This document shows, one piece after another, positions 17,190-35,386 of a stretch of DNA of 64,000 nt. The first letter of the stretch is position 1; each line of letters begins with the position of its first letter. This DNA is from Saccostrea cucullata (taxonomy: Eukaryota). The notes beneath the pieces were generated by a model, which saw nothing but the letters and a program-made list of their open reading frames with translations, was not told the origin of the DNA and ran no database searches. The DNA lies in NCBI RefSeq assembly GCF_032062105.1, contig NW_026929709.1, forward strand, positions 62,001 to 126,000, written 5' to 3'. The position numbers and the translations under genes are program-made.

Positions 17190-19193
17190 TTTTAGTAGAA
17201 GCGTATGATTTTATTCATTTTCGTAATGAGGAAATAATAATGTTATGAAAATTTTAATACAAGGACGGAAAATTCCAATAGTTACTATTTCAATGGTATA
17301 TCTTTTTTTTTCATAAATTTTGATAATTGTACCAGAACTTATGTTTCCGTTATTCAAATAGAACATGTATGAAGCAATGATAATAATGAGAACTATAATA
17401 ACGGTACTTATATCTTTACAGAAATAAATTTGAAGGTTAATATGAGGATGAATTTTCTATACTGTATAAATATAAGAGGACTTCAGTGACCCGTGCTTTA
17501 AACATCGGTCCAATGTCCAGGACTAAAATGAAGTTTTACAAGCCCTATATTGCACATCCGCAGGACATTACAGTGATAACATTCAAAATTATATGCATAC
17601 GGCTAAGTACGCAATATTACATTAAGTTGTACTGTGAAGAATCCTAGGAACTAGAAAAATCCTCCGTTTTAGATCCATTGGATCTGAATTGCTCCCAGGA
17701 TAAACAAGAAAATTCATAACCATATCTCACTGCACATCTCCGGAACACCACCAAATATATTCCAAAAGATAACTTACATATCGTTACTGTGAACAATATT
17801 TGAGGAGTGTTTAATAGAAAAGATGCTTTTTGACCCCCAGGATGAGAAATCAATAAAAAATGTTGACACTTTATTAAACATCTGAAGCTGGACTCTACGT
17901 ACATTCCATATGAGGATTTGTATTGTAAGTGAATGGTATAAAAGGGGTCTTTTTGAGAGAGGATAGATAGATAGACGGATCAGGTTATTAACATCAAAAC
18001 TTTTCTTAAAGGTCCATGGAAACATTTTAAACTGCTTTTTTTAAAAACCAATTTTAATTTTTACAATTCCTAACTAAGGCAATTCAAAGGATCAGCAAAA
18101 CTTTGAACATCATTTGTTGATTTACATGTAGGACTCAGATTTGGACTGAGGTTGATCAGTGGGGGGTGAGGGGGGGTGGGGCTGTGGGTGCTGGAAAAGC
18201 CGGCACTCCTTTCAGCAGAGGTTGATGCTTGAAGGGCTGCATGGAGATACAGGACTGAGAATTCTTCATAATGTAAACAAGGATCGTGCCTTGTTTTTGT
18301 TTAAATGTAGAAAATATCATATTTATAACAAAAGGAGATTCAGCAAATCATTAGAAAATGTCTAATTGTATCGTATGTAGAATTAACTTCTTTATTGAAA
18401 GAATCTGTTTTGACTAACACATATCAGCATGTTTAACCTATTTAAACGAAAGCATGGCTCGGGGCTTGTTTACATGACAAAGGTTTGGATTTCTATATCT
18501 GTCTTGTAACTCAACAACTCAAAAGCACTTGATGAGTAAAATGCCTGTTAAGTTTTAAAGTGCCAGTAAGTCAATGAATCATTTTTGGAACTTTCACGGA
18601 CTCAAGACGTGTTGAAAATACATTTATATCCACACTCCCGCCTTTTACCAAAACACAAACATGCACTTCAATGTACAGTTATACAAATTAAGAGACAACA
18701 ATTCAGAAGATCAGATAAATGTCAAAGTATTCCATTGCCATCAGTTACCAATTATCACTGGAACTTCTTACTTTTTCAGGATCAGAAAGGAGATAGTGTT
18801 GCAACCCTTAGATCCTCCACAGCTTTGATCAAAGTTACGCAACTCAGAAAAGTGTACCTGATAAAGCTGGAATAATAAAAAAGAGATATTCAGACTTATG
18901 TCAAAAAATGGTGGGTAAATTTTGCATGAAAACAACTTTAAGTTCAATGACTGTTTCCATCTAACTCTATGAACGATTAATATATAAACGTCCAAAGTTA
19001 AAACACAAAAAGATTTTGGCAGCTAGCTAAAATTCTACTTTCGGTTTAAAATGTACACTATTTTTTCTTATAAAAATTTTGTTTCAATATTTTGGTGTCC
19101 ATTGAACATCTTTTCTACATTCCAACCGTTGCACATCTGAGTTTTTGAACCTTACTTCGAAAGGATTTGCTTTGGCTGACATCCATGTTTAGT

Positions 19194-19585
19194 AGTAGTA
19201 TAGAGTGAGACTTTTTATGCTACTTTGAGGTGCAAACTGATTTGAGGTGGAGAGGTGGACTTTAAAGGCGGAAGTATAAAGTAAATCCGGATGCTAATAA
19301 TGACTATATGTATTTATAGGGAAGCAAACCCGGATGATTTTTACTTATGATTAGCTAATACACATACGTTTAGTCCTATGAATATATTTAATGTTAAGAC
19401 GAGTTGAAACTATGTCAATAGTGTATTAAGATCCTACACTGTGTCCATTATTGAAATAAGACGTGTATTTACTGTTTTGATTCACCAAAGTAGTTTTGAT
19501 AAGAACGGTGAATGTCCAGTACATACAAATTAGACGAAAATTTTTTAACATGTAGCCTTAGTCAAAACACACGTTTTATAACCAA
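19194..19585 (+). repeat. Polinton left TIR (~390 bp)
   Basis: Reverse complement of ~34908-35386. Outer ~160 bp nearly identical, inner part more diverged. Confidence 0.9.
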
Positions 19586-19613
19586 ACCTTGAAAGATGAT
19601 AAACTAGGTGAAA

Positions 19614-20216
19614 ATGAAACCTAATTTTTCAAGAACTAGTCATTTAATCAATTTAAAAGAAGAAATAAAAAGAGACACGGAGAAATGGGAGCAATATAGC
19701 GAACACCTTGTCTATAGCTTTGGTGACATTTGCACGACTCCTGTTAAAGCAATCATACACCAAGTGAATTGTTTAGCTATTCGTTCTCACGGACTTTCTA
19801 AGTACATAGCTCATAAATTTCCATGGGCAGATATTTACAAAACGCGACGAGGAGTAGGAGGGCACAACCTTGCTATTCCCGAGGACAGAGGGACCCCTGG
19901 AACTGTTAAGATTCTGCGTTCACCCAACGGTCATTCACCAGATGTAGTGTGTTTTCTGAGTCAGTGGGACATGGGCCGTACAGCACAATACCGCAAAATA
20001 CCACCTTATGAAGACCTACCACTTGAACGTGAATTCTGGTTTAAGCAATGTCTGAATGAACTATCGAAAGAAGACTACGAGAGCATAGCTTTCCCATATA
20101 AAATTGGATGTGGCCTAGCTGGGGGAAAATGGCTCAAATATCATCTCATGATAAAAGAATTTGCTTCGAAATATGAGGGTCAAGTATACGTTGTGAGAAA
20201 CGAGATCATTCGTTAA
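19614..20216 (+). CDS. Macrodomain protein (TARG1/DarG/Poa1-like)
   Basis: GDI...IIHQVNC....GLSKYIAHKFP and IAFPYKIGCGLAGGKW macrodomain motifs. Confidence 0.85.
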   Translation: MKPNFSRTSHLINLKEEIKRDTEKWEQYSEHLVYSFGDICTTPVKAIIHQVNCLAIRSHGLSKYIAHKFPWADIYKTRRGVGGHNLAIPEDRGTPGTVKILRSPNGHSPDVVCFLSQWDMGRTAQYRKIPPYEDLPLEREFWFKQCLNELSKEDYESIAFPYKIGCGLAGGKWLKYHLMIKEFASKYEGQVYVVRNEIIR

Positions 20217-20571: not shown

Positions 20572-21075
20572 ATGTTTTCTTCTTGCTGTAAATTAGCTTT
20601 AGAGAATGATCGCTTCATTGAGGTATACACTACGAAAAACAACGAAAAAAGAGTAGACCTTCGCGAATGGAAAACGGATCGCTATGCCACAAAGAAAGGG
20701 ATTAGTTTAAGGTTGGACCTTTTTAAAACATTCACACTGGCTCTCGACATGATTGATACAGCTTTAAACAATAACGAAGATCTACACTACCACATGGGCT
20801 CCAACATTTTCTGTTCAGTTCATAAAGACAATCCGTGTGTGAACATACGGCAGTATTGGAAACCTCCAAATACTGATATACTCGTGCCAACAAAAAAGGG
20901 GATATGTCTTAGACCTGTGGAGTACAGAACACTGAAAAAGTGTGTAGCTGAAATAGAAAAAGTCGTTCCGGAACTTGAATCGCTCGTACCTTGCTTTTTG
21001 CGCGAGGATCATATAAACCAATTAGGCATGCTCAGATGTCCTACTTGTAACCCGCTGGAGTATGTGAACTGGTGA
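20572..21075 (+). CDS. Tandem PC4/Sub1-like ssDNA-binding domains plus a C-terminal Cys/His motif
   Basis: Two repeats, VDLREW...TKKGISL and VNIRQYW...PTKKGICL, match the PC4 signature IDIREY...P.KKGISL. Confidence 0.85.
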   Translation: MFSSCCKLALENDRFIEVYTTKNNEKRVDLREWKTDRYATKKGISLRLDLFKTFTLALDMIDTALNNNEDLHYHMGSNIFCSVHKDNPCVNIRQYWKPPNTDILVPTKKGICLRPVEYRTLKKCVAEIEKVVPELESLVPCFLREDHINQLGMLRCPTCNPLEYVNW

Positions 21076-21354
21076 GAAGAGACGAGACAAGCAAGAAGAC
21101 AGCTTTTAAAGACTTTCATAACTTAATATTCATCATTATTGCTTATGTATCATTTGTAAAAAGATGATCAAGATTCTGAAGGGAACATTCACAAATGACG
21201 TTTAAACAATGTAGATATATTGCTTGTGAGTAAAATATGTAAAGAAGTATAATTATGCATACAGATGTAATAAACATGTTTATTCAAACGTTTATGAATC
21301 TTCATTGTTATTTAATCATATGACTCAACTAGGATATATATATCTCAAAAAGTC

Positions 21355-21894
21355 ATGGCTAATTTATTTGCAGGAATAATGAGGTTGACAAACGTCGTGT
21401 ACCAAGGAGACATGAATTGTTTTATCAATCTTCAACAACTAACATACCGTTTAGTTAACGTGCGGTATGATCCTCTCAAATTTCCAGGGGTTATTTTTCA
21501 ACATAGAAAAATAGGAGGGAACTGTTTAATATTTTCCAATGGAAAGATAAATTGCAACGGAGCATGCGATAGTTTTAATACTGGACTAAAACGACTGAGA
21601 AGGTATGCTCGCTACATTCAACGAATTGGATATGACGTCGTACTTACTAACGTACATATTGTCACCGCCTCCGCGTTTCACAAACTATCTAATCGTTTAG
21701 ATGTAAATTCAATTTCTCCAGCCTTAAAATTTTCTTATGATCCTGAATTATTTCCTGCTGTAATGTTGCGACGAAATGATATTCATTTTACATGTCACTT
21801 AAGTGGGAGCGTGTTAATTACTGGCATAAAACGAGTCAAGGATCTAGATGAGATTGTGTACCCAACTATAGTAGAAATAGAAACCTCATTATAA
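21355..21894 (+). CDS. TATA-binding-protein-like protein (core domain only, 179 aa)
   Basis: Two TBP repeats: NVV...YDPLKFPGVI...LIFSNGKINCNGA and YDPELFPAVML...SGSVLITG. Confidence 0.9.
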   Translation: MANLFAGIMRLTNVVYQGDMNCFINLQQLTYRLVNVRYDPLKFPGVIFQHRKIGGNCLIFSNGKINCNGACDSFNTGLKRLRRYARYIQRIGYDVVLTNVHIVTASAFHKLSNRLDVNSISPALKFSYDPELFPAVMLRRNDIHFTCHLSGSVLITGIKRVKDLDEIVYPTIVEIETSL

Positions 21895-21945
21895 GAAGAA
21901 GAAAAGTTTTATTTAGTTCTAATTATTTATACCATAATCATAACG

Positions 21946-23058
21946 ATGACGTACGAAGACTATTTAAAATCCATCTATTACGATGCAAAGCACCCCGGGT
22001 CTCTTAGTGGATTGGAGAAGCTATATCGAGCTGCTCGAAAGGAAGGAAAATATGTACTCAGTCGATCTAAAATCAAAAAATGGTTACAAAAGCAAGAAAC
22101 CTTTACTCTACATAAGCAAATCAATAGAAAATTCAAACGCGCGAAAGTTATTGTACCGGGAATTGGATACCAGAGGGACGCAGACACAGCCTTCATGACT
22201 TCTTATCGAAAGGAAAACGACGGATATGCATATTTTCTAGTACTTATAGACGTTTTTTCAAAATTTGTTTGGACTGTTCCCTTAAAATCTACGAAGGGTT
22301 CTGAGATGACTAAAGCATTAAAATTTGTGTTTTTACACTCTACACCTCCTGCAAAACTTCGTAGTGACAAAGGAGTTGAATATGTCAGTAAAGAGGTTCA
22401 ACAATTACTGAAACAGAAAGGTATTACTCACTTTTTTACTCAAAACGAAATGAAAGCAAACTATGCCGAAAGAGTTATAAAAACTTTAAAATCTCGATTG
22501 AGTCGATACATGACAAAACACCAGACTCATCGATGGGTGAACATCTTACCTAAAGTCACCGAAAGTTATAATTCTACTTATCATCGTTACATCAAAATGG
22601 CTCCAAACCAAGTGAAAAAGAGCGATGAACCCTACATTTGGATGAAGAATTACGATTATGCTTGCAGTGACAGTTCAAATTCAACGCAGTCAAAACACGT
22701 AAAGAACGTACAATATAAGTTTAAAATTGGTGACATGGTTCGCATTTCTCGGTTGCGAGGAGCGTTTGATCGAGAATACGATGAACGATGGAGTGGAGAG
22801 CATTTTGTCGTGAAATCTCGCTCTATCAAACAAGGTATACCGATTTACGAAATACAGGATATCGATGGAGAAGACATAAAAGGTAGTTTTTACCAACAAG
22901 AATTGCAAAAAGTAACAATCACAGATGACACATTGTATAGAATCGAAAAGATAATAAAATACAAGGGGAACCAAGCTTTGGTTAAATGGTATGGTTGGCC
23001 CAAGAAATTCAATAGTTACATCCCTCGATCGTCGCTGAAATATTATAAGAATTCTTAG
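21946..23058 (+). CDS. Retroviral-like DDE integrase with a C-terminal chromodomain
   Basis: DADT, SDKGVEY and AERVIKTLK form the catalytic triad. YRIEKI...LVKWYGWP..FNSYI is a chromodomain. Confidence 0.95.
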   Translation: MTYEDYLKSIYYDAKHPGSLSGLEKLYRAARKEGKYVLSRSKIKKWLQKQETFTLHKQINRKFKRAKVIVPGIGYQRDADTAFMTSYRKENDGYAYFLVLIDVFSKFVWTVPLKSTKGSEMTKALKFVFLHSTPPAKLRSDKGVEYVSKEVQQLLKQKGITHFFTQNEMKANYAERVIKTLKSRLSRYMTKHQTHRWVNILPKVTESYNSTYHRYIKMAPNQVKKSDEPYIWMKNYDYACSDSSNSTQSKHVKNVQYKFKIGDMVRISRLRGAFDREYDERWSGEHFVVKSRSIKQGIPIYEIQDIDGEDIKGSFYQQELQKVTITDDTLYRIEKIIKYKGNQALVKWYGWPKKFNSYIPRSSLKYYKNS

Positions 23059-23086
23059 ATTATACTATAATTAAAACTGTTCAAAA

Positions 23087-23431
23087 ATGGAGCAATCTCG
23101 CGTGATGCAAAACGCCGATTTTTTAAGAGAACTCGGGCATGCGAATTACATTCGACAACGTGTCATAATACAGAGAGCTAATCAACGACAGATTTCCGCT
23201 CTCAGTGATGTTGTACGACATCTGCTTGATAGAACAATACCCATACTATCACACGACCGCAGCTTTTTCCGTCAACACAACTTAGTCATGAGGACTCTGT
23301 CAAGTTCTAGAGTTTCGGTGTCCCGTAAGAAAAGAACATTACTGACGCATCATACCCTGATTCCCAGTCTTCTAAGAGACTACTACTTAGCTAGAATACT
23401 TATTTTATCCATCAGGAACAGCGAGTCCTAA
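23087..23431 (+). CDS. Small basic helical Polinton protein, paralog of 26605-26928
   Basis: The pattern FL..L......R..I....QI..L......L...I.......F..H......L......S.KK..L aligns with the 26605-26928 protein. Confidence 0.7.
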   Translation: MEQSRVMQNADFLRELGHANYIRQRVIIQRANQRQISALSDVVRHLLDRTIPILSHDRSFFRQHNLVMRTLSSSRVSVSRKKRTLLTHHTLIPSLLRDYYLARILILSIRNSES

Positions 23432-23480
23432 GGTTATAAGAAGTTGGTTAACCTAAAGGAGAAAACACGAAAAAGAAGCA

Positions 23481-23906
23481 ATGGCCGTATATCTTTTCAT
23501 AGACAGCAGAGACTCTACCGTTTTCCATCCTTCCAACACTTCTGATGACTTTCTTGTGACGCTGCCCAAAGCTTACTTGATAGATGACTCGTGGGAATGT
23601 GCCATTTTAGAATTAAACATTGATATACACGATGATGTTAGTACAGCTAAATTGTATGTATGTTGTGACATCATAGGCGATAGTTACGTCAAAAATACGA
23701 TGTTACCAATTTTGAGAGCCATCACGTTAAAAAGAGGAATTAATCAGATAACCTACACAAATCCCTTTTACATGACAGTTTCTAAACAGGAAATCAGTCA
23801 AATAAGAATATTTATAAGAAACAAAGACTTGAGTGTTCTTCATTCTCAAGTTAATTTTTTCAATTGTACTCTGTGTTTGCGTAAAAAGAAATTATGGGAT
23901 CAGTAG
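23481..23906 (+). CDS. Minor capsid protein (penton), compact single jelly-roll
   Basis: S..S...HPSN...DF...LP......WE.A..E, LYV.CDII..S.V.....PILR and PFY..V....I..I.I.I motifs. Confidence 0.85.
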   Translation: MAVYLFIDSRDSTVFHPSNTSDDFLVTLPKAYLIDDSWECAILELNIDIHDDVSTAKLYVCCDIIGDSYVKNTMLPILRAITLKRGINQITYTNPFYMTVSKQEISQIRIFIRNKDLSVLHSQVNFFNCTLCLRKKKLWDQ

Positions 23907-24271
23907 AAGTATACGACTACAAGAAAATGCAATGGGTACCATACATTCCGAACTTCGATAAATGGGTTCGCCATTTTGAAGATATTTCTGCTGGAAGAGT
24001 TCGACCGGACTACAAGGGGCGTTACATTGTAGGAAGTGGTTCTCATAACCGAACAGTACCTCCCAGTCAAGAACATAAACCCACCGTAAAGCTTGTGACA
24101 CCAGTAGCACAGGCCATCGAAATGGCCAGATCAGAATTAGAGCGCGAACAAGACAACTCTCCGAATGAGGATAAATCTATAAGAAGGAAACGATTCTTAG
24201 CCCCGCCTGGCAAACGCGACAATAAACCTAGGACCAAGAAACCTAAATTCGATACACAATTCGACGATTAG
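23894..24271 (+). CDS. Uncharacterised Polinton protein, possible virion core protein
   Basis: 125-aa ORF packed between penton and MCP. Basic C-terminus; VGSG resembles an adenain cleavage site. Confidence 0.7.
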   Translation: MGSVEVYDYKKMQWVPYIPNFDKWVRHFEDISAGRVRPDYKGRYIVGSGSHNRTVPPSQEHKPTVKLVTPVAQAIEMARSELEREQDNSPNEDKSIRRKRFLAPPGKRDNKPRTKKPKFDTQFDD

Positions 24272-24273
24272 TC

Positions 24274-25521
24274 ATGGATGAAAATCATTTAAATCAACTC
24301 TCCCTTTTTGAATCACCTCCCGTCGATACGACCATTCAAACGAGAGAATGGGTGGAATTTAGACCTATCAATCAAATATCAGAGTACTCTGCTTTGGAAT
24401 TTAACATACCACCACTCTCTACGGGTTACATGGATCTTAGAAATAGTCGGTTAAAAGTCAAATTGAGAATACTGAATTCCTTGAACAATCCTATCACGAA
24501 AGAAGATGCTGTGGGTTTGGTGAATCTACCTTTACACACCATATTTGCTCAGGTAGACACCAGTCTACAGCAAACCCCTGTATCTCAGTTGGGCACAAAC
24601 TATCCTTACAAGGCCTACATCGATACTCTGTTGACTACCTCCGCTGACAACTACGGAGTGCGATACTCTCAACTTTTTATTAAGGACTCCAACAATCCCG
24701 ACGATGCCGATCCTATCAAGGGCCTGAATTCAGGATTGTACCTACGTTATGTATTTACTCAAGAAGGCAAAATACTAGATTTGGAAGGCCCCCTGCAGAT
24801 TGACCTCTTCCAGCAGGAACGTTTAATTTTAAACGGAGTATCACTTTCGCTAAAATTGTGGCCCAGTAAAGATGCCTTTAAACTGATGTCAGTGTCTGGT
24901 TTAGATTACAAAGTTCAGATTGTCGATGCGAGTTTTAAGCTATGTATCCAGAGACCGAATCCTGCCCTGACCATGGCCCATGTCAAAATGCTAGAAAAGT
25001 CTCCTGCAATATATCCTTACGTATTTTCTAATCTGAAAATAGCTTCCATCGCTAAAGGAGAATTCGGTTTTACCATGGACGACGTATTTCAGGGAGAAAT
25101 TCCCTCCACCCTCATTCTGGGACTGGTTTCTAGCAGTGCCTTTAGTGGAAGTTATAAGAAGTCACCCTTTAACTTTCAACATTTTGATTGTAATTTTGTA
25201 GCTTTCTACGTGGACGGACAGTCTTTTCCCGCCAAACCTTTACAACCCAACTATAATGCCGATACTTACTTGGAAGCTTACCAAACCTTAGTTTCGGGTA
25301 GAGAAAACGTTTATGTTGAACGTGAAGAATACCCAAAAGGCAATGCCCTTTACGTATTGGACATCAATCCCTACATAGATTTTAACACAAGAAGAAAAGG
25401 GCATTGTCGCCTAGAACTCAAATTCGCATTTCCATTACCAGAGAGCGTAACATTAATTTTATATGGAAAGTTTCCACAAGTTCTCCACATCGACCAATCT
25501 CGAAGCATCATATTCAAATGA
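24274..25521 (+). CDS. Major capsid protein (double jelly-roll)
   Basis: LSLFESPPVDTTI, LEFNIP, YPYKAYIDTLL, LILNGV and SPFNFQHFD motifs; 415 aa. Confidence 0.93.
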   Translation: MDENHLNQLSLFESPPVDTTIQTREWVEFRPINQISEYSALEFNIPPLSTGYMDLRNSRLKVKLRILNSLNNPITKEDAVGLVNLPLHTIFAQVDTSLQQTPVSQLGTNYPYKAYIDTLLTTSADNYGVRYSQLFIKDSNNPDDADPIKGLNSGLYLRYVFTQEGKILDLEGPLQIDLFQQERLILNGVSLSLKLWPSKDAFKLMSVSGLDYKVQIVDASFKLCIQRPNPALTMAHVKMLEKSPAIYPYVFSNLKIASIAKGEFGFTMDDVFQGEIPSTLILGLVSSSAFSGSYKKSPFNFQHFDCNFVAFYVDGQSFPAKPLQPNYNADTYLEAYQTLVSGRENVYVEREEYPKGNALYVLDINPYIDFNTRRKGHCRLELKFAFPLPESVTLILYGKFPQVLHIDQSRSIIFK

Positions 25522-25886
25522 ATAACTTTGAATTGAAATCTTATTTGTCGAGATATGACAGTTGCGGAGGAAGAGGAAAGCATTGGGTCGCTATCCATTT
25601 TCCTTTAAGAGGCCCAGCAGATTTTTTTGATTCTCTAGGAAACTCTCCGGAATTTTACAACACCAGATTCAGATACATTTTGACAATTAATGGCCCTAAA
25701 TATCAATACTCCAATTCTAGAATCCAATCAGAAACGTCTAGTGTGTGTGGACATTATTGTATTTATTTCATTGCTAAAAGAAATGTGGGATTTTCTATGA
25801 AAAATATTATGCATGATTTTAGTGTATCACATTTGCATGAAAACGACCGTTTGGTCTCTGACTATGTAAAACAATTACATCAATAA
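25518..25886 (+). CDS. Adenain-like cysteine protease, apparently internally shortened
   Basis: The ATG overlaps the MCP stop (ATGA). Catalytic motifs GKHWVA, FFDSLG and RIQ...SSVCGHYC. Confidence 0.85.
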   Translation: MNNFELKSYLSRYDSCGGRGKHWVAIHFPLRGPADFFDSLGNSPEFYNTRFRYILTINGPKYQYSNSRIQSETSSVCGHYCIYFIAKRNVGFSMKNIMHDFSVSHLHENDRLVSDYVKQLHQ

Positions 25887-26257
25887 AATTATACGAACAA
25901 TTTTCCTTTTACGTTGATTTTTTAATTTGAAAATAATACTAGGTATTTAATATGTTAATAAAAATGAAACATGAATAGAATTATTTTGTGTCTTAATTGC
26001 TGCTAACAGAAACCTTCAAGTTGAGTTCATACTAAGTAACTATTTCGGGAAAAAAACACAGAGTTGACTAAAAATTATTAGTAATTATCATTTAATGAAA
26101 TTCACATACGAAATTGGGTTATTTCTTTAGAATAATCTTCTACAATAGAGTGTTACTTGTAAATCCAGACGAATAAATAACAAAAGAATGAAAAATTATA
26201 TATAATTCTTTATTAGTATGCAGCATTGGTGATTAATAATAGAACAGTGAATATGGT

Positions 26258-26617
26258 TTAAAATTGAATCCAAGTTTTATTAAGTCTGTATCGAGAATAA
26301 GGTTTCTTTGCGGATTTCAAAATCTTTTTTGCGATTTTTAAAGTCTTTTGGAGTGCTGGCTGTATTTTCATTAAAGGCTCAGGAGATGTACGCAAAAAAT
26401 CCTCTATAGTTTCAGAATCCACCAAATTCTCAGTCTGTGAGCTTTGGTTGTTTGTCTCCTGTTGTAACTCATCAGGTTTAGTCATATCTTCAGGTTTGTT
26501 TTTGGGTGTTTCTGTAGAATTTTGTTTAAAAACTTCCTGATGCGACTCTTGGAGAGACAACAGACGTTGGTATTTGTCGTATGGTACCAAAACAGATTTT
26601 TGCATTACGTCCACCAT
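26258..26617 (-). CDS. Uncharacterised Polinton protein
   Basis: 119-aa ORF in the convergent gene block; N-terminal KSVLVPYDKYQRL. Confidence 0.65.
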   Translation of the reverse strand: MVDVMQKSVLVPYDKYQRLLSLQESHQEVFKQNSTETPKNKPEDMTKPDELQQETNNQSSQTENLVDSETIEDFLRTSPEPLMKIQPALQKTLKIAKKILKSAKKPYSRYRLNKTWIQF

Positions 26618-26928
26618 CTTCTTAGGAAAGGTTTTACAATTTTTAGAAAAACGGGAACGATCCGATGTTTTCTTTTTAAGAGAAGTAACTTGCTTTTTCG
26701 CGACGCCGTCTTATCCCCCAAAACTAGAAGAAATAATTTGTGCTTTTTAAGTATATTTTTCTCACTTTGGTTAAGTACAATAACACTATGTATGACGTTC
26801 GCAGCTATTTCTCCCAACACTTGTAATTGTGGTTTCGTCACAGAACTCAGTAACAACTTTCTTTGTGCGGGGGATGTTTGTAGTAAAAGTTCTAAAAAGG
26901 ATTTCTGGTCTCTAACCAAGGAACTCAT
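26605..26928 (-). CDS. Small basic helical Polinton protein, paralog of 23087-23431
   Basis: QKSFLELLLQTSPAQRKLLL...QLQVLGEIAANVI...LKKHK pattern; sits next to the ATPase. Confidence 0.75.
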   Translation of the reverse strand: MSSLVRDQKSFLELLLQTSPAQRKLLLSSVTKPQLQVLGEIAANVIHSVIVLNQSEKNILKKHKLFLLVLGDKTASRKSKLLLLKRKHRIVPVFLKIVKPFLRRWWT

Positions 26929-26955
26929 TTTAAAGATAAACTTGAAAGGGCATTC

Positions 26956-27603
26956 TTATAAACTGGTGTAAACTACGGGTTCTTCCTCCGGAAATATGTT
27001 GGTTCGGAGTCTATATTTGTCGTTGCCTTGTGGTGACGTATCAACTACGAGGTACCCAAAAGCTTGTTTAGTTGCATCAGTGTATGCTTCTATTAATACT
27101 TTAGAGCGTCCTGGGTATAGTTGTCGGCCTAGCATAGATATCTGCGAGGCGTTTCTCATGTTTTTCATGAGTACTAAATAATAGGTATTTAAGGCTAGGG
27201 TTCGAGATTTAGAGCCTCTTGGAAAAATATTTTGGGTTATGAAAATGACGCTGAGACGTCGGTGATGACAGCCCTGTGTAAACAAAAGTTCCATGTCTAC
27301 ATCCTGTACGACTCTATGCATTAAATCATCTAACACTATTAATGTATGCTGGCGATCGGAAGTCAAATCTTGAATTGTTTCATTAGAAGGTATCCCGTGA
27401 TGTAATTTCAAGTTAGAAATATGTTGCTCTATTTCGTCAAATAAAGGCTGATGAATTCCGCAACAATATAAAATTCTTTTGGGAGGTTCCTTAACATACA
27501 TTTCATCTAATTGAGTCAGTAACCGATATACAAATCTTGTTTTTCCGCTTCCTGTTTGCCCGCTAATACACATGCTCGAACAAGGTTGAAAAGGAATACT
27601 CAT
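26956..27603 (-). CDS. A32/FtsK-like genome packaging ATPase
   Basis: Walker A GQTGSGKT, Walker B LIVLDD, HHRRLSVIFITQN, and RLRTNIF. Confidence 0.95.
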   Translation of the reverse strand: MSIPFQPCSSMCISGQTGSGKTRFVYRLLTQLDEMYVKEPPKRILYCCGIHQPLFDEIEQHISNLKLHHGIPSNETIQDLTSDRQHTLIVLDDLMHRVVQDVDMELLFTQGCHHRRLSVIFITQNIFPRGSKSRTLALNTYYLVLMKNMRNASQISMLGRQLYPGRSKVLIEAYTDATKQAFGYLVVDTSPQGNDKYRLRTNIFPEEEPVVYTSL

Positions 27604-27644
27604 CTTGATTATTCTTCTAATCCCTCTGCGATAGAGCAGGGTTC

Positions 27645-27875
27645 TTATATCTTATCAGCCTTTAAAGACGGGTTGGGTAAGACATAACCTATGGCACTAC
27701 TCAGCAAAGATATCCATAATTCAGAGGAGCCGTTTTTTAATGACAGATTAACTATAGAAGTGATTATGATGATATATACCACTGTCATTTGACAGAAATA
27801 TACTATTTCCGATTTCGGGAGTTTACTCCCTAGAAACCTCCAAGATTCTGTTGAAGTGCTATTAGGTCTTTCCAT
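27645..27875 (-). CDS. Small two-helix membrane protein
   Basis: 76 aa with two hydrophobic segments and GYVLPNP. Has an upstream TATAAGAA like its neighbours. Confidence 0.7.
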   Translation of the reverse strand: MERPNSTSTESWRFLGSKLPKSEIVYFCQMTVVYIIIITSIVNLSLKNGSSELWISLLSSAIGYVLPNPSLKADKI

Positions 27876-28352
27876 AATTAAAAAAAAACAACACCATTAC
27901 ATTAATGCTTCTTATAAACTCTTACTGAATAATATAAAAGATGACTTATAAACTACAAAAACACGACAATACAAAATCTGTTTGTCAACATTTATTTTTA
28001 TATGATTATGTATATGTAAATAACAACTATAGGATGTAACATATGTTCTCATAAATCTATATACAATATGTACAATGTATTTGGTCTATGCCTGACTCAC
28101 GCCTGATGAAAGAAGGGCACAATTTTATAAACAATATTGAGAGCAACTTTTAATTATATACAACAAGTAACGCTATATACTTTTAATAATAGAATGATAT
28201 ATCTATGAGTAATTTGAAAAAAAAAATTAAAAAAAAAATTAACAAAATAATAAACAACAATAAAACCTATTAATGAAGTCCTCCCTATACCATTGCCTAA
28301 AACTTCAAATTTATTCACTCATGTTTGATAGTTAATTGTATATCGACTTCTA

Positions 28353-31300
28353 TTATTCGACTTCTTCTAGAAGATGAATAAGATTTAAATCGAAGTCGTC
28401 AATTTCGATATCATCGATCTTTTTAGGTTTTAAGGGACACAGTTCTATATCTAATGGTTTTGTAATCACACCGTCAGCTAGTACTTTTCTTTTACAGTAA
28501 AAGTAGGAAAAACCATTCCTCACTTGACGATAAGTGCAGATTTTGTTATTGTGAAGTTTAAAACCCATATTTATCCCAAAAGCTTGTTTTTGAGTCTTTA
28601 AAACATTTCTAAAAGTGGTTAGGGGTGCTTTTACTCTTTTCTTGGAAACACCTTTGCATGAAAATTTACAATGGGTGATATCTCTTTGTTTGATATTTTT
28701 CCGCCTGTTCACTGATTTACATTTCTTAGCTCGTTTAAGTAAGCGCCCAGCCGTTATCACGGCGCTTGAAAGCGACACTTGCTTTCGAGCTGAAACGATA
28801 TAAGTCTTGGAACAAAGACCAATGATCTCGTCCCCTTCATATTCAATTTTAAAGAGACCAGGCGTTCTACGATCGTACTTTGCGTGTTCCTTACAGAAAG
28901 TGCGAGGAAACCAATGTCGGTCGCAGTCCGCCTCGATCTCTAGGGTGCTTGTACAATATCCGTTGAGACCGTGATCGTAAAGCTGTCGTAGTTCAGGTTT
29001 AATCACGGACTCAAAGGTGGAACCCGATATCGCCATGTAGGCAGAGTCGGTGTCCATCTCGCAGTATTCAAAGTCTGCACGGTCTACAAATCTATCCATG
29101 AAATCATAGTAGAATTGCAACATGTGCAGTTTTGCATACTGCAAGATGAAGTAACCGATCTGAATGGGCAAGTTCAAATTCAATTTCTTTTTACTTCTTT
29201 CTATTTCATACAATTCCTCGTCTTCTATCAAAGTTGTTAATTTTTTAAAGTGAGGCTCATTTATTTCCATCATGGCATTCCCTTCTCCTCTAACATATTT
29301 GACGACCTGAAATTTTTCTTGATCCATGATGGTGGATCCAAAAGCACTATTACCTTCTAATTTTCGCGTGTCTGCGATAATTGCTTTAGAAGGATCTACG
29401 TCACCTTCACGCCTAGCATTACTGACATCGCTTACGAATGATCGAAAACATCGTTGTGGCGTGAATTCCACGGTTTGATAAATTTTTGTGATTTCCAGAC
29501 CATGACTTATATACCACTTCAGTAATGGAGTAGCAATTAATAATTGGCGTGCGCGCATTCCCCCGACTAGTAATCGCCTAGGTTTTGTAGAAAGGTGAAA
29601 GCGCTTTACATGATTTTGCATGTGATGACCTATCACGTCAAAGGGAATGTCGGTGGTACAAAAGAGGGGACTCATTTCTGAAAAAAACTCATAAGGGGTC
29701 ATAGTGGGGTGGCTGAAGTGAGCAGGCCAGGTATCCGGTACGCGAATGTCGCACTCGACCATGCCAAACAACTTATTACTCATCACGGCAACTATTACGT
29801 CTTCCGAAGACAAAGAACCTTGACTCATATTAGGTTTACGCGAATTTGAGAATTTTTTCAATTTCAAATTAGACCGAACGTTATTTCGGAAAGTGCATTC
29901 GCGCATTTCTACTACTTTATAACCTTTCCTTTGAAGATAAAGTGTTGTTTTGCGAGTTTTCTTTTCGCGACCATTCATCAGCTTGTCGTCTTGAACATGA
30001 CGCGTTAACCAACAACGGTGGCCGTGCCAGTAGCAGCCTTGAAACTGAAACACAGTGTTGGAAGCTTCATCATAACCGTCGACCGGAAAGCGACCTATTT
30101 TCTTTTCCTTTCCGGAATTCAATTTGTGTGTAATCTTGTACTGACCACTGTGGTTCAGCCACTCTAACCAATCATAAGCTAGAGAGTATCGATCGCGTTT
30201 CTGTGGTTTAAATCCGTCGTCTACCTTACGGCGCACAAAAGAACCCACGGGCATTTCTTTCCCTATACAGTGTAGATACAGGGCATTAGCATCGAAGCCA
30301 ATAATCTTACCACAAGGTTTCTGGGAATTCCCTCGAATATAAGTTTTTCCAACCTCGTGATGGCGATTAAATATGATACTCGGTCCGCCAATAATGTTTT
30401 GCTTAATGGTATCATACAAGTCTTCGTTGGCTTGATCGATCAATGCAAAACTGGCCCCCTCTTTTCTCCCACTGTCAAACAACATTCGGCGCGCTAGACC
30501 GGGAACCGAAATACTACATTTGAAAATATCAATTTGACGTTCGAAATAGTACTTCTGTAGATTTGTCACAGCCTGCACGAAAGGTTTGACGTCGAGGTTG
30601 TTATACCACACCAGAAAATCGCGAAATGATGTCATATTTTTTTCCTCCCACACTTTTTGACAAAAGGCGTATTCTTCGTTTGTAATATTTGAATCTTTCA
30701 AAGACGAATAAAAAGCTTCATGTGGAGGAAGTTCGGGGTGATTTAATTTTTCAACAGAGTCTAGAAATTGGTAGGGAAAAAACCCTTTACATTCTTGTAC
30801 ATCGAAAGCACGCAAGAACCCTGAATAATTGATGCCGGGACTCAGATACTGTGTAATATCTAAAAATTTAAACCTACGAGTACTTATGCAGGCATAAGCA
30901 TTATTTCGCTTGACGGTGAATGTGCCATTTGTCGAACCTAGCTCAAGATGTTTGATGAGATAACTTTTGATCAAATTGATGTCGTATTTGGCGGAATTGA
31001 AACCGATACAAATGATCTGTTCGCAATATTCTTCCATTTCCACCTTCAACTTTTCTATGCTTTTCTTTTCATCTTCAATCATTTTATTGACATCGTCTTC
31101 GTGTTCGAGGTACTCGGCCATGTCCTCGTCTACATTGTCGAAAACAAGGTCACTGAGAGCCTCGAACACGTAGGCAAATTTTTCTTTTGCTAGTTCAGCA
31201 GCCCTATTAGCAATCATTGTCATGCACTGAACCATGTTCTTGACCAGAGTGTTGATATCTGGTTCAATGATACAATGTGGTTTTGTGTACTCATCTACGT

Positions 31301-34244
31301 TAGAACAGATGCTAACAGAGATAGGTACGTGATTTTCTGTGTATTGCTGAGAATCAGAACTTTCTGTATACATTGGAACCAGCATAGACTCAAAGTCATA
31401 CACTAAGAACCACTCGTATATTCTTTCTTTTTCGGGAACGCTTATACCGAATTGATCCAATTTATCAAACACGGTATTTGGAGAATAATGAAACCCTCCC
31501 TGAAATCTTCTCTTTGTTTTTCCCGAACAAACACGCTGATGTCGTTTCATATTTTTGAGATGATTGAAATGACGACGACATGTTTTGCACTGAAATTTTT
31601 TGGCATAAGCATTAAAATTCGAGATGTAAGACAGATGGTGCTCGTAAAGATTTAAATAAATGGTGTCCGAAAATTTACACATGGATTTGTAGATAGACTG
31701 TGCTGATTGACTTTCATTCAATGAGAAGACATTAACATTGATTTTGAAGCATTTTTCAATATAAGCAATTTCGTTCAAAGTGATACCCGGGAATGTTTTA
31801 GGATTTGAATCCACTTCTCTTTGGTGAGCATTTTGAAATGACACCCATTGTTGAAATAAAATAAGTGTACGAGATTCTAAGCCCGAAGGATAGTACCCTT
31901 GATGAACCGCTAAACAGCGGAACGCACACAAATTATCTGTATATATTTGACCTTTCCGGTCCTTTGTCAGCTTGATAATAGATTTTGATTGACTAATGTG
32001 AGGAGGTAACATGACTTCCTCATTTCCCAAAACAAAATTCAAATGGTATATGACAATGCGAACATTGGTTATTAAATAGGGTTTCCATTTTGTGTCGGGT
32101 CGTTGGCGTAATATGTAATTCGTAATATTAAGTCGTTGCATTCGCTGCTGCAGTCGATTTAAGTGATTGCGCTGTGACACGTAAATGGGTCTTTGAAAAA
32201 CTTCATGGTTATGATGGGGTTTAAAATATCTATATTCTCTTGTTTCTGTATTAACTAATATGAGACCAAATTCTAGATTCAATCTGAAAGCTCTATTTTG
32301 TCGATCATAAATTTCGTTGGCTGCTTGCATTATTTCCCCTACAGAAAACTGATTATCTATTGGAAAATTATAAATACTACAAACAGTCCCCTCTTGATGA
32401 CGCCGTAATATAATTGGGGCATTACTTTCATATACTTCTTTCAGGCTTTGATCAACTATTCCACCTTCTTTCCAAGGAGGGGATCCATTTCCCCATGGTC
32501 TGGCTTGTAATCCTCCCTCTCCCACTTGAAAATGTTCATTCATCTGATGAACAAAGAGATTACGACGCGAATCAAATCTGAGATGACAAGTTCTACATGT
32601 GTATCGTTCAATGGGCACCTGAAATACAAGCAAAAAAAAACTTTTATTTTTTTTTATTTTTAGATAAAAAGTTAGAAAATGAAAGAAAACTACTCAATCA
32701 TTATTGAAATAATTTTTGTAATGAAATAAGCACTTTTGATTATCAGTGAATCTTTGAATAGGTCCGATTTCATTTAATTCTTTTGTAATAAAAATAATCA
32801 TTTAAAAATTCTCTGTAAATAATTCATGTTAATAGGTATACCTCATTCTGCATTTCATCATATCTGTTACTAGGTCCCAGAATATCTTGATAATTCTGTT
32901 AAAAATATCAAATGAATGCTCTAAATTTCGATTAACTTCGAATGGAAAAAAATTATCATAAATGATTTCTTCGTGTATAAACATAAAGAATTATTTAAAA
33001 TCGCTTTCTTAAATTACTTAAATAACATGTTTTTATTAATAAATATCTCATGTTGCTTTTCATCAGATCTGTAACTAGCTGCTGGAATATCTTGATTATT
33101 CTGTTTTTTAAAAAACCCAATGAATACTGTAAATTTCGATTGGTTTCGAAAAGATATCATAATTTGTTTTCTTCTTAAAGAAGTATAAAGGATTATTTAA
33201 AATTGTTTTCTCTAATTTCAAATAGAAGGATATTTTAACCTAGTAAATACCTCATGTTGAATTTCATCAGATTTATAACTAGGTCCTGGAATATCTTGAT
33301 ATTTCTGTTAAACAAAAAAAATTACATCAATAGAATTTACTTTGGAAAATAAAAGCGGGTGAGGATATAATTAAAATTTTAGATGTACCTGTTTAAGAAT
33401 ATTGTGTTTACTTCAATTTTTCTCCGATCGTTTGTCTGATTCCATTTACTGGTAAATTGATTATATTTATTCTTAAATATATAAAAGTTATATTAGTAAA
33501 AAAATATTTTACTTTTCTAAATTATTTATTTATAGAACTTAAAGTCACAATTGTCAGATTGTTCTTGACACTTGTCAAAATGTCTGAGTTTCTCTCTCGT
33601 TGTTTTGTCATTATTGCTTCCTTTTTTGAAGTACGGTATTACTAGATTTAAAGTCGATTAAAAGTAATTTTTTCTCTGATTGTAAAAGAAAAAAGAACAA
33701 CAAAATAAAGAGGGTAATATGCCTTTTTCAAATGAATAAAATAATTATCTTGATTTTAATGTCTAAAAGCAAGAAACATAAAATATTCTTTGCAAGTTTA
33801 GAAGTACCACATTTATTAAATATGAAGCTATTATTTGGAGAACCCCGTATTTATTTAGTCAAGACCCAAATGAGTGCAAGATCACACTTACGTGTTTTAA
33901 TTTTCGTAAATAATTCTTACCTTGCATCTGGCTATATGTTGCTGATGAGCCTTTTCACACAAGTATTCTTTTTTGCACCTTTCACATTTCAACAACTTAT
34001 CCCTGTGTTCTTTAAGTATATGGATACGCCGTTGAATGGAAGTTTTGAAACATTTCGCGCAATGGGAACACGTTTTACTCTTCTCACATGTCTTCAAATG
34101 ACGTTCGAAATTGTCTTTCCGATTTATTTCTTTTCCACAAAAATTACATTTCAATTTCACTTTGTTTAAATGTATGTCCAAATGGCGTTTTCTTGCGAAT
34201 TCACTACTAAATTTTTTGTTGCAGTGAGGACAAGGATGCTCCAT
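28353..34244 (-). CDS. polB: Spliced protein-primed family B DNA polymerase with N-terminal C2H2 fingers; exons 34244-33921, optional 54-nt microexons, and 32618-28353
   Basis: Exo motifs YDFES, FNSAKYD, YNNLDV; polymerase motifs DANALY, KLEGNSAFG, MDTDS; Vsr-like insert VDGY...QFQGCYWHGH. The long ORF has no ATG but starts at a polypyrimidine-CAG acceptor (32618). The upstream four-finger ORF ends in a phase-0 AAG|GTAAGA donor. Confidence 0.9.
32842..33304 (-). repeat. Three ~205-bp tandem units, each holding a 54-nt exon-like core
   Basis: Cores at 33304-33251, 33100-33047 and 32895-32842, each preceded by ACAG. Confidence 0.85.
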
Positions 34245-34907
34245 CGCTAAAATTTGTCGATAACATTTGTTTTCCGAATTAGTTCAAACATATTTTAACG
34301 TTCGTTATATATATAACAAAATGAATTCCGTATCACTAGTTTCTCTTCTTATGTGTTTCTGTTCAATTAATAATTTAAATTTCATGTATATATCGTTATT
34401 AACGGAAACTGACGACTAACTGATCCTTGTTTGTGTAATACGTTATAATGCAGTACCGGAATAGCTTTATTTCGGAAAATAACAACGGATATGAGTAAAG
34501 GAAATTTATTTGTAAATACAAATCCTTAAACAAATTTTGAATAATTTTTTTTTAATTTGACTAAATTGTGAATCAAATCAATTTTTTTTCTTTGTCCAGT
34601 TGCATTTGTTTGTATTTATTGCTCTCCAATCATGTTAATAATCTCGGTGGTGGTGGTCGTAGTGTTCTTTCTCCACCGATCTTCCTAGATTATTTGAATT
34701 TTACTTTTATAAATAAATATAATTCGTCAATTTTTGTGTCTCTCATGATGGCAGAATTGAATATTGTTTAGTATTAGTTTATATCTCTCCAATTCCAATT
34801 TCTCCGTATCTCTTTATTTGAATATTTCTTCTCTAAAATTTATTAAATGACTAGTTTTTAAGCAAATAGAGGTTTCACTTAATACATGTTTATCATCTTT
34901 TAAGGCC

Positions 34908-35386
34908 TGGTTATAGACTTGTATCTTGACTCAAAATTAGGCCTCATATAGTTAAAATGTTTCGTTTCATTTGTATGTACAGGACATTCACGAAACCGTT
35001 CTTATCAAACCTACTTTTATGAATCAAAGCAATAAATATACGTCTCATTTCAATAATAGACACAGTTTAGGATCTTAATACACTATTGACATATTGTTAT
35101 GTCTATGAGATGTATGTCTCTCAGACTTCAATAAAACTGAACTGAACTGACATAGTAAGCTTCAACTCGTCATAACATTTAAAGAAATACAATATATTCA
35201 TAGGACTTAACGTTTGTGTATAAGGTAATCATAAGTAAAAAATCATCCGGGTTTGCTTCCCTATAGTTACATATAGTCATTATTAGCATCCGGATTTACT
35301 TTATACTTCCACCTTTAAAGCCCACCTCTCCACCTCAAATCAGTTTGCACCTCAAAGTAGCATAAAAAGTCTCACTCTATACTACT
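34908..35386 (-). repeat. Polinton right TIR
   Basis: Inverted match to 19194-19585, with an extra insertion at 35094-35147. Confidence 0.9.
35094..35147 (+). mobile_element. 54-bp retroposon 3' tail inserted in the right TIR
   Basis: Absent from the left TIR. Flanked by a TGACATA duplication (35087-35093, 35148-35154). Contains a stem-loop, AATAAA and an (ACTGA)n tail. Confidence 0.8.

What the first reader, a model, noticed from the sequence alone, without database searches (positions are those of the whole stretch)
21355..27916. Polinton with its own TBP and a shared variant TATA box (TATAAGAA) before its virion/integration genes: a candidate self-encoded late-transcription system
Seen: the exact octamer TATAAGAA lies in the sense orientation 32-96 bp upstream of eight ATGs. 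On the + strand: 21890 (integrase), 23044 (ORF 23087), 23435 (penton), 23813 (ORF 23894), 24178 (MCP). On the - strand: 27916 (TM protein), 27649 (ATPase), 26960 (ORF 26928). Several copies overlap the previous gene's stop codon or coding end. Its orientation flips with the gene blocks. A rough composition-based expectation is about one hit in this 6 kb. The macrodomain, PC4, TBP and polB genes lack it; TBP and polB instead have plain TATATATA upstream (~21334, ~34306). Known: Polintons encode no RNA polymerase and rely on host Pol II. Inference: host TBP drives the early genes, then the element's TBP redirects Pol II to TATAAGAA late promoters. This would parallel herpesvirus vTBP/TATT and is reminiscent of the baculovirus TAAG late motif.
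Basis: partly seen in the sequence, partly recalled or inferred. Interest (0 to 1): 0.95.

Follow-up and report, generated by a model that had tools for sequence, protein, structure and literature searches.

The report
Polinton with own TBP, shared promoter
A complete virus-like mobile element in an animal (probably bivalve) genome carries its own TATA-binding protein and PC4 cofactor and places one exact 8-base TATA-like motif in front of its capsid, packaging and integrase genes; this looks like a private promoter code, but nothing yet shows that its own TBP reads it.

Summary
TATAAGAA occurs 9 times in 21355-27916, against 0.6-0.76 expected. It does not occur in the other 10 kb of the element. 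All 9 copies lie on the coding strand of the local gene block. Eight lie 32-96 nt upstream of an ATG (P about 6e-10). Only the eight bases are conserved, and one-mismatch variants are not enriched.

The element is a full Polinton/Maverick (adintovirus-like): 19194-35386, long TIRs and a 6-bp TSD. It has an rve integrase, a double-jelly-roll capsid protein (confident model), an A32-type ATPase, a clan-CE protease and a protein-primed PolB (shown through relatives).

The TBP is real (Pfam 81.5 bits; model TM 0.82-0.86 to solved TBPs). It belongs to a family of about 130 clusters in bivalves and marine metagenomes, with its own set of DNA-contact residues. A PC4 family has a parallel distribution.

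The promoter reading is well supported. The link to the element's own TBP and the early/late cascade are inference: cellular TBP has been crystallised on a box variant with G at what I take to be the matching position.

I rate this a new variant of a known kind, interest 0.62.

The parts
19188..19193 (.). target-site duplication TTTAGT, left copy
   Evidence: the same 6 bases flank both ends of the element
19194..19667 (.). left terminal inverted repeat
   Evidence: inverted-repeat pairs I1-I6; outer 149 nt are 97% complementary to 35238-35386; first shared base is 19194
19614..20216 (+). macro-domain-like gene; no octamer upstream
   Evidence: PHROG phosphatase/macro family E 3.3e-10; weak Pfam Macro; weak PDB macro-like hits
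20572..21075 (+). PC4 (p15/Sub1)-like transcriptional coactivator gene; no octamer upstream
   Evidence: Pfam PF02229 62.8 bits; PDB PC4 6ycs/1pcf; family of 120 clusters, named ones from bivalves
21335..21342 (.). (TA)4 run upstream of the TBP gene
   Evidence: 37-44 nt before the Met9 ATG (21379), where 53 of 72 relatives start
21355..21894 (+). TATA-binding protein gene (179 aa ORF; likely start 21379, 171 aa)
   Evidence: Pfam PF00352 81.5 bits, two repeats; full-length match to human, plant and yeast TBP cores at E 1e-18; AF2 pLDDT 93.9; TM 0.82-0.86 to solved TBPs
21890..21897 (+). octamer TATAAGAA, 56 nt upstream of the integrase ATG; holds the TBP stop codon
21946..23058 (+). rve-type integrase with a weak chromodomain signal
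   Evidence: Pfam rve 52.2 bits, Chromo E 0.015
23044..23051 (+). octamer, 43 nt upstream of ORF 23087
23087..23431 (+). ORF of 114 aa, basic, function unknown
   Evidence: no family hit; 17% K+R
23435..23442 (+). octamer, 46 nt upstream of ORF 23481
23481..23906 (+).
   Evidence: no significant Pfam, PHROG or PDB hit
23813..23820 (+). octamer, 81 nt upstream of ORF 23894
23894..24271 (+). ORF of 125 aa, function unknown
   Evidence: no family hit
24178..24185 (+). octamer, 96 nt upstream of the MCP ATG
24274..25521 (+). major capsid protein, double jelly-roll, full length
   Evidence: 7058 representatives, end-to-end matches of 420-440 aa; AF2 pLDDT 94.1, pTM 0.91; Foldseek hits to virophage, NCLDV, adomavirus, MELD-virus and adintovirus capsid proteins, E down to 1e-18
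25153..25160 (+). ninth octamer copy, inside the MCP ORF, 365 nt upstream of the protease ATG; role open
25518..25886 (+). clan-CE (Ulp1/adenain-like) cysteine protease, 122 aa; its ATG overlaps the MCP stop codon
   Evidence: PDB cysteine protease S273R, E 1.1e-4 over the catalytic core; translation
26258..26617 (-). ORF of 119 aa, last of the minus block; no octamer within 120 nt
26605..26928 (-). ORF of 107 aa, basic, function unknown
26953..26960 (-). octamer, 32 nt upstream of ORF 26928; holds the ATPase stop codon
26956..27603 (-). A32/FtsK-HerA-type genome-packaging ATPase
   Evidence: Pfam Pox_A32 23.5 bits (cut-off 22.8), AAA_22
27642..27649 (-). octamer, 46 nt upstream of the ATPase ATG; holds the stop codon of ORF 27875
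27645..27875 (-). ORF of 76 aa with one strongly hydrophobic segment
   Evidence: maximum 19-aa hydropathy 2.25
27909..27916 (-). octamer, 41 nt upstream of ORF 27875; 437 nt downstream of the polB stop
28353..32633 (-). protein-primed family-B DNA polymerase, large last exon (open frame of 1426 aa) with C2H2 fingers and a Vsr-like endonuclease signal
   Evidence: no direct Pfam or PDB polymerase hit; relatives at 49-79% identity carry PF03175 and zf-C2H2; endonuclease signal
32832..33319 (-). three tandem units of about 205 bp between the zinc-finger ORF and the polB ORF, each with a short AG...GT-bounded open segment
   Evidence: sequence read
33897..34244 (-). C2H2 zinc-finger ORF ending at a GT; candidate first exon of the polB gene (model untested, exons not joined)
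   Evidence: Pfam zf-C2H2 E 3e-9; relatives combine zf-C2H2 with PF03175
34306..34315 (.). (TA)5 run, 62-71 nt upstream of the zinc-finger ORF ATG
34823..35386 (.). right terminal inverted repeat
35387..35392 (.). target-site duplication TTTAGT, right copy

Best explanation
The region is the morphogenesis and integration module of an intact-looking 16.2-kb Polinton/Maverick (adintovirus-like element) inserted in an animal genome. TATAAGAA is a shared TATA-type core-promoter element. One copy sits before each of eight genes: integrase, four small ORFs, MCP, ATPase and a small hydrophobic protein. This would give each gene its own RNA polymerase II start and make the module one co-regulated set (about 0.75 likely). 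The element also encodes a bona fide but divergent TBP and a PC4-like coactivator, neither of which is preceded by the octamer. The most likely mechanism (inference, about 0.4) has three steps. Host TBP starts the TBP and polB genes from plain (TA)n boxes. The element's TBP keeps the saddle fold and the Pro-Glu-Leu stirrup motif but has family-specific polar residues where cellular TBP has Val and Thr in its first repeat. It binds the exact octamer in preference. With PC4 it then recruits host TFIIB and Pol II to the virion and integrase genes. Shown: the motif statistics, the gene identities, the TBP fold and the family conservation. Inferred: promoter activity, which protein reads the motif, and the temporal order.
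For: Motif: 9 copies against 0.6-0.76 expected, none in the rest of the element, chance level in the host flanks. It is the top 8-mer upstream of genes. P 5.7e-10 for position, 9 of 9 for strand. It is sharply bounded at eight bases with unrelated flanks. Exact copies only: one-mismatch variants are at chance level. That strictness is more than cellular TBP needs for a TATA box (own knowledge). Promoter rather than 3'-end signal: no copy follows the last gene of either block, and the first minus-strand copy is far from the polB stop but 41 nt from the next ATG. TBP: Pfam 81.5 bits, E 1e-18 to solved TBPs, pLDDT 93.9, TM 0.82-0.86 and rmsd 2.0-2.8 A. Family of 130 clusters at 43-92% identity. 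Three of the four Phe that I map to the intercalating positions are kept (94-100%). The fourth is His in 61% and Phe in 33%. The positions I map to the Val and Thr of the first repeat are Asn in 75% and 88%. Pro-Glu-Leu in the second stirrup is at least 90% conserved. By my own knowledge of TBP-DNA structures, the first repeat lies over the 3' half of the box, where the octamer has its G. PC4: Pfam 62.8 bits and a family with a parallel distribution in bivalves. The TBP gene and the candidate polB first exon have (TA)n runs instead.
Against: There are no transcript data, so no start site is known. The octamer is close to an ordinary TATA box, and wild-type plant TBP was crystallised on a box variant labelled G(-26) (1qn5), so host TBP may suffice. 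ORF 26928 has its octamer only 32 nt before the ATG, which leaves almost no leader for a start about 30 nt downstream. One copy (25153) lies inside a gene. The mapping of contact residues rests on a sequence alignment to PDB 1cdw plus my memory of which residues contact DNA. The second-repeat Asn could not be placed. Conservation of the motif in relatives was not examined (step referred), so a feature of this one copy cannot be excluded. PC4 and macro have neither kind of box within 120 nt.
Confidence: 0.4

Rival explanations
1. The octamer is an ordinary TATA box served by the host's own TBP/TFIID. The element's TBP and PC4 do something else, for example raising overall transcription of the element, escaping host regulators of TBP, or serving another polymerase.
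For: The octamer differs from a plain A/T box only by its G. Cellular TBP has been solved on a box variant labelled G(-26) (1qn5). The distances to the ATG (32-96 nt) are like those of the (TA)n boxes before the TBP gene and the candidate polB exon.
Against: Eight of eight gene-proximal copies are identical over all eight bases, and one-mismatch variants are not enriched. Host TBP tolerates many variants (own knowledge), so it would not enforce this. The octamer is at chance level in 47.8 kb of host flank. The TBP family conserves a distinct set of DNA-facing residues.
Confidence: 0.3
2. The octamer is an initiator-type promoter at which transcription starts within or next to the motif. It would be read by a factor other than TBP: another protein of the element, or the transcription machinery of a helper large DNA virus, as in virophages and Polinton-like viruses.
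For: Virophages and endogenous mavirus-like elements carry short exact motifs before their genes that match promoters of their giant viruses (PMC8547959; PMC11464507). Leaders of 32-96 nt would be unremarkable, and the 32-nt spacing of ORF 26928 fits better. Large DNA viruses of molluscs exist (abalone asfa-like virus appears among the fold hits).
Against: The motif precedes only one module, not all genes. The element carries a TBP, which points to Pol II and a TATA-type reading. No helper virus is known for animal Polintons (own knowledge), and none can be tested here.
Confidence: 0.15
3. The octamer is a 3'-end or translational signal of the upstream gene (stop, termination or processing), not a promoter.
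For: In four sites, bases 3-5 are the stop codon of the upstream ORF, and three of these ORFs end Ser-Leu-stop.
Against: Five sites are not stop codons. Two lie 84 nt inside the upstream ORF. No copy follows the last gene of either block, and none follows macro, PC4 or polB.
Confidence: 0.04
4. Chance clustering of an A/T-rich word in A/T-rich DNA.
For: The window is about 32% G+C and the word occurs 10 times outside the element.
Against: Poisson P 2e-8 to 1e-7. About 3e-4 to 4e-3 by my own rough correction for all roughly 33,000 strand-collapsed 8-mers. Position P 5.7e-10. No random-window trial came near the observed count.
Confidence: 0.01

Closest known systems
Polintons/Mavericks of animals (adintoviruses; Starrett et al. 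2021, PMC8502044)
   Same: TIRs, 6-bp TSD, rve integrase, protein-primed PolB, double-jelly-roll MCP, A32-type ATPase, clan-CE protease. A 'TBP' accessory gene is listed in that paper's Figure 5 legend for MELD viruses with adinto-like PolB.
   Different: No promoter analysis is reported there (the word 'promoter' does not occur). Here TBP is paired with PC4 and with one exact octamer before one gene module. The polB gene seems to have introns and zinc-finger exons.
Late-gene system of beta- and gamma-herpesviruses, with a viral TBP mimic (e.g. PMC12529657)
   Same: A virus-encoded protein of TBP fold directs host Pol II to a dedicated TATA-like element before late (virion) genes.
   Different: Here the protein is a compact two-repeat TBP of 171-179 aa, 26-28% identical to cellular TBP and found by plain sequence search. 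The only herpesvirus match is a remote fold hit (E 9e-6, 11% identity). None of the other viral pre-initiation-complex partners was seen. It works alike at most; it is not a member.
Promoter motifs of virophages, endogenous mavirus-like elements and Polinton-like viruses (PMC8547959; PMC11464507)
   Same: A short exact A/T-rich motif within 100 nt upstream of genes in a Polinton-related element.
   Different: Those motifs copy the promoters of a helper giant virus and are read by its RNA polymerase. Here the host is an animal, no helper is known, the motif is TATA-like, it covers one module only, and the element brings its own TBP.
TBP homologues of giant viruses (Nucleocytoviricota)
   Same: Virus-encoded TBP fold (best BFVD hits, E 5e-13 to 1e-7).
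   Different: At most 22% identity. Those viruses also encode their own RNA polymerase. The family here is closer to cellular TBP than to any of them.
Cellular TBP paralogues of animals (TBPL1/TRF2, TBPL2/TRF3); own knowledge, except that PMC7755920's abstract describes TBPL2
   Same: A second TBP-type factor that serves a special promoter set.
   Different: Those are host genes. No solved TBPL1 came back as a hit, so the relation to them was not tested.

Membership tests
Polinton/Maverick (adintovirus-like element) | terminal inverted repeats and a 6-bp target-site duplication | tested here: met
   TIRs 19194-19667 and 34823-35386; TSD TTTAGT
Polinton/Maverick (adintovirus-like element) | retrovirus-like (rve) integrase | tested here: met
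   Pfam rve 52.2 bits
Polinton/Maverick (adintovirus-like element) | protein-primed family-B DNA polymerase | tested here: met
   Met indirectly only. The ORF has no Pfam or PDB polymerase hit itself, but relatives at 49-61% identity carry PF03175 and some are named DNA-directed DNA polymerase.
Polinton/Maverick (adintovirus-like element) | double-jelly-roll major capsid protein | tested here: met
   AF2 model with pLDDT 94.1; Foldseek matches to DJR capsid proteins
Polinton/Maverick (adintovirus-like element) | minor (penton) capsid protein | tested here: inconclusive
Polinton/Maverick (adintovirus-like element) | FtsK/A32-type packaging ATPase and clan-CE maturation protease | tested here: met
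   Pox_A32 above the cut-off; protease matches PDB S273R at E 1.1e-4
TATA-binding protein (PF00352) | two TBP repeats forming the saddle fold | tested here: met
   Pfam two stretches, 81.5 bits; model with two S1-H1-S2-S5-H2 repeats; TM 0.82-0.86
TATA-binding protein (PF00352) | two pairs of intercalating phenylalanines | tested here: inconclusive
   Three of four are kept (94-100% in the family). The fourth is His here, and His 61% / Phe 33% in the family. The mapping to 1cdw is partly from my own knowledge.
TATA-binding protein (PF00352) | TFIIB-contacting Pro-Glu-Leu stirrup of the second repeat | tested here: met
   P130, E131 and L132 are at least 90% conserved. The role of the motif is from my own knowledge.
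TATA-binding protein (PF00352) | binding of a TATA element | not testable with these tools
   no DNA-binding data and no protein-DNA modelling tool
PC4/Sub1 coactivator (PF02229) | PC4 C-terminal single-stranded-DNA-binding domain | tested here: met
   62.8 bits against a cut-off of 25; PDB 6ycs and 1pcf
Herpesvirus-type viral TBP late-gene system | homology to the herpesviral TBP mimic and presence of its partner proteins | tested here: not met
   Only a remote fold hit to a ranid herpesvirus ORF (E 9e-6, 11% identity); no partner found among the ORFs
Herpesvirus-type viral TBP late-gene system | dedicated promoter element restricted to late genes and read by the viral protein | tested here: inconclusive
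   The restriction to one gene module is shown; timing and reader are untested
Virophage/PLV helper-matched promoter motif | motif before most genes that matches the promoter of a co-infecting giant virus | not testable with these tools
   The motif is present before 8 of 13 genes; no helper virus is known or on hand

The most novel reading that the evidence does not exclude
A lineage of animal (bivalve) Polintons carries a private pair of general transcription factors (a divergent TBP plus PC4) and a private, exact 8-base TATA variant that marks its virion and integrase genes. A 16-kb element with no RNA polymerase would then run a two-tier Pol II programme: host TBP first, its own TBP afterwards. 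That would be the smallest virus-like element known to do so. It would also be an independent invention of the strategy used by beta- and gamma-herpesviruses, here with a genuine TBP.
Probability: 0.3. Interest if true: 0.85.

Novelty: new variant of a known kind. Interest (0 to 1): 0.62.

Why it matters
How Polintons/Mavericks express their genes is essentially unknown. In the searchable library I found no paper that links a Polinton to a TATA box or to its own TBP beyond one figure legend. An exact motif that splits the genes of one element into two sets, together with an element-encoded TBP and PC4 family conserved across bivalves and marine metagenomes, gives a concrete and checkable model of temporal control in these elements. 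It would also give a natural example of a TBP with altered DNA-contact residues matched to a variant box. Finally, it offers a simple sequence signature for annotating transcription units in such elements.

Tried and rejected
- **Host species:** exact-protein look-ups of two flanking host ORFs found nothing on record. The host is named only as an animal, probably a bivalve. This rests on a rhodopsin-type GPCR, LINE and Gypsy-like elements in the flanks and on the named relatives.
- **Direct polymerase signature:** Pfam, PDB and PHROGs gave no solid hit on the 1426-aa ORF. The question was settled through relatives.
- **Frameshifted MCP:** rejected. The ORF that overlaps its end is the protease in another frame, and the MCP matches relatives end to end.
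- **Degenerate motif family:** rejected. One-mismatch variants are at chance level.
- **Other copies or fragments of the element in the window:** none.
- **Bacterial promoter/terminator scan:** uninformative.
- **Tandem Repeats Finder:** it missed the 205-bp units; the repeat finder found them (one search was a strand-argument error).
- **Protein-level proxy for motif conservation:** 67% of TBP relatives end in Leu, Ile or Val, as a stop codon inside the octamer would require, against 12% for PC4 and 30% for MCP. This could equally be ordinary conservation of the C-terminus, so I do not count it as evidence.

Full report
**Observation**

The octamer TATAAGAA occurs 19 times in the window, against 7.3 +/- 2.8 in shuffles. 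Nine copies lie in 21890-27916. Six are on the plus strand among plus-strand genes and three on the minus strand among minus-strand genes.

- Markov models of order 0-3 fitted to 21355-27916 expect 0.62-0.76 copies (Poisson P 2e-8 to 1e-7).
- The other 10 kb of the element hold none.
- The 47.8 kb outside the element hold ten, which is chance level.
- In an unbiased test over all 8-mers it is the commonest word in the 120-nt upstream windows, present in 8 of 13 genes. In 2000 draws of random windows from the element, no word reached more than 5.
- Eight of nine copies start 32-96 nt upstream of an ATG in sense. Only 5.3% of positions and strands qualify, so P is 5.7e-10.
- Column counts show eight invariant positions, a T before the motif in 7 of 9 copies, and nothing else. 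The copies are therefore not pieces of a duplicated segment.
- One-mismatch variants are not enriched (154 against 157 expected).

**What the element is**

Inverted repeats define an element at 19194-35386 (16,193 bp), flanked by a 6-bp duplication TTTAGT.

| Gene | Evidence |
|---|---|
| rve integrase | |
| Capsid protein, 415 aa | Matches about 7000 representatives end to end. A confident model (pLDDT 94.1) matches double-jelly-roll capsid proteins of virophages, giant viruses, adomaviruses, a MELD virus and an adintovirus. |
| A32-type ATPase | |
| Clan-CE cysteine protease, 122 aa | Its ATG overlaps the capsid stop codon. |
| Large polymerase ORF | No direct polymerase hit. Its relatives at 49-79% identity, in Crassostrea, Mytilus, Pinctada, Haliotis, Solemya, Tegillarca and Asterias, carry PF03175 and C2H2 fingers. 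|

The flanks hold a rhodopsin-type receptor ORF, a LINE and a Gypsy-like element. The host is therefore an animal, probably a bivalve. The species was not identified.

I found no stop or frameshift in any gene that has recognisable relatives: TBP, PC4, integrase, capsid, ATPase and the polymerase ORF (0 breaks counted). For the small ORFs without relatives, and for the short protease, I cannot tell.

**The polymerase gene**

The polymerase gene looks spliced:
- a C2H2 ORF (33897-34244, minus strand) ends at a GT;
- three tandem units of about 205 bp each hold a short AG...GT-bounded open segment;
- the 1426-aa ORF follows a T-rich tract and an AG.

No tool predicted these introns. I searched the pieces apart by reference and left the joined step out.

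**TBP and PC4**

The 179-aa ORF at 21355 matches Pfam TBP at 81.5 bits with both repeats. It matches solved TBP cores over its whole length at E 1e-18. With 72 relatives as alignment, the model has pLDDT 93.9. It superposes on TBP in DNA and pre-initiation complexes at TM 0.82-0.86 and 26-28% identity. Viral TBPs in BFVD are more distant, at 22% identity or less.

The protein search found 130 clusters of 165-190 aa at 43-92% identity. The named ones come from Pinctada, Crassostrea virginica and Mytilus; the rest come from ENA, JGI and Logan assemblies, several with many member sequences. Most relatives start at the window protein's Met9 (53 of 72), so the likely start is 21379.

I mapped the DNA-contact positions of PDB 1cdw onto the family. 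The alignment is; which residues contact DNA is from my own knowledge. The shares are:

| Position in cellular TBP | Residue in this family |
|---|---|
| First-repeat Asn | 94% kept |
| Three of the four intercalating Phe | 94-100% kept |
| Fourth Phe | His 61%, Phe 33% |
| First-repeat Val | Asn 75% |
| First-repeat Thr | Asn 88% |
| Second-repeat Thr | 94% kept |
| Second-repeat Asn | no clear counterpart |

Pro-Glu-Leu of the second stirrup is at least 90% conserved. The family thus looks like a working DNA-binding TBP with its own contact chemistry.

The PC4-like gene scores 62.8 bits. Its family has 120 clusters and a parallel distribution: Saccostrea, Mytilus, Mercenaria and the same kinds of assemblies. 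TBP P0055 and polymerase P0163 both list an NCBI contig of 11,068 bp, which suggests one contig holds both genes. I did not fetch it.

**Mechanism**

Position, strand, exactness and the lack of a copy after the last gene of either block favour a promoter element over a 3'-end signal. Four copies also supply the stop codon of the upstream ORF, which I read as genome compaction.

The TBP gene and the candidate first polB exon have (TA)4-5 runs at similar distances instead. PC4 and macro have neither.

That the element's TBP reads the octamer is inference. The first repeat should lie over the 3' half of the box, where the octamer has its G, and that is where the family has Asn for Val and Thr.

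Against this inference: wild-type TBP was crystallised on a box variant labelled G(-26) (1qn5), and the 32-nt spacing at ORF 26928 is short for a TATA-type start.

**What is known**

- Starrett et al. 2021 list TBP among accessory genes of MELD viruses in a figure legend, without any promoter analysis.
- Virophages and mavirus-like elements have gene-proximal motifs tied to their giant viruses.
- Beta- and gamma-herpesviruses use a TBP mimic for late genes.
- I found nothing that links Polintons to a TATA box or to a TBP-dependent programme.

I fetched no herpesvirus, baculovirus or adenovirus sequence, and I did not use the motif letters that the finding quotes under virus names. Conservation is given as shares by column.

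I draw no conclusion from that call.
- In my reasoning I also repeated the two virus-named motifs of the finding while marking them as not to be used.

None of these went into a search of a collection, and nothing in this report rests on them.

Noticed in passing
window 32832-33319 and 33897-34244 (minus strand): The polymerase gene seems to have introns. A C2H2 zinc-finger ORF ends at a GT. Three tandem units of about 205 bp each hold a short AG...GT-bounded open segment, upstream of the 1426-aa ORF. This looks like a repeated mini-exon array.
   Followed up: partly
window 28353-32633 (minus strand), residues about 856-918 of the ORF: Weak Vsr-like (very-short-patch repair) endonuclease signal inside the polymerase protein (PDB E 0.075; PHROG endonuclease E 6e-6). 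Some relatives are named G:T-mismatch repair endonuclease by JGI.
   Followed up: partly
window 21890, 26960, 27649, 27916: In four octamer copies, bases 3-5 serve as the stop codon of the upstream ORF. Three of these ORFs end Ser-Leu-stop.
   Followed up: partly
window 19614-20216: A macro-domain-like gene starts inside the left TIR. It is a possible ADP-ribose-processing accessory gene of the element.
   Followed up: partly
window 25153-25160: A ninth octamer copy lies inside the capsid gene, 365 nt before the protease ATG. It may be a promoter with a long leader, or the one copy that chance allows.
   Followed up: partly
window 26197-26204: A third (TA)4 run of the element lies in the gap between the two converging gene blocks, not before any ORF.
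   Followed up: no
window 5681-6550; 310-2394; 48680-51841; 55285-60035: Host context: an intronless rhodopsin-type receptor ORF, a reverse-transcriptase ORF, a LINE (endonuclease plus RT) and a Gypsy-like gag-pol element. The element is 36-39% G+C, against about 30% in much of the flanks.
   Followed up: partly
proteins P0055 and P0163: A TBP relative and a polymerase relative both list an NCBI contig of 11,068 bp, probably the same contig. This hints that the TBP gene travels with this polymerase elsewhere.
   Followed up: no
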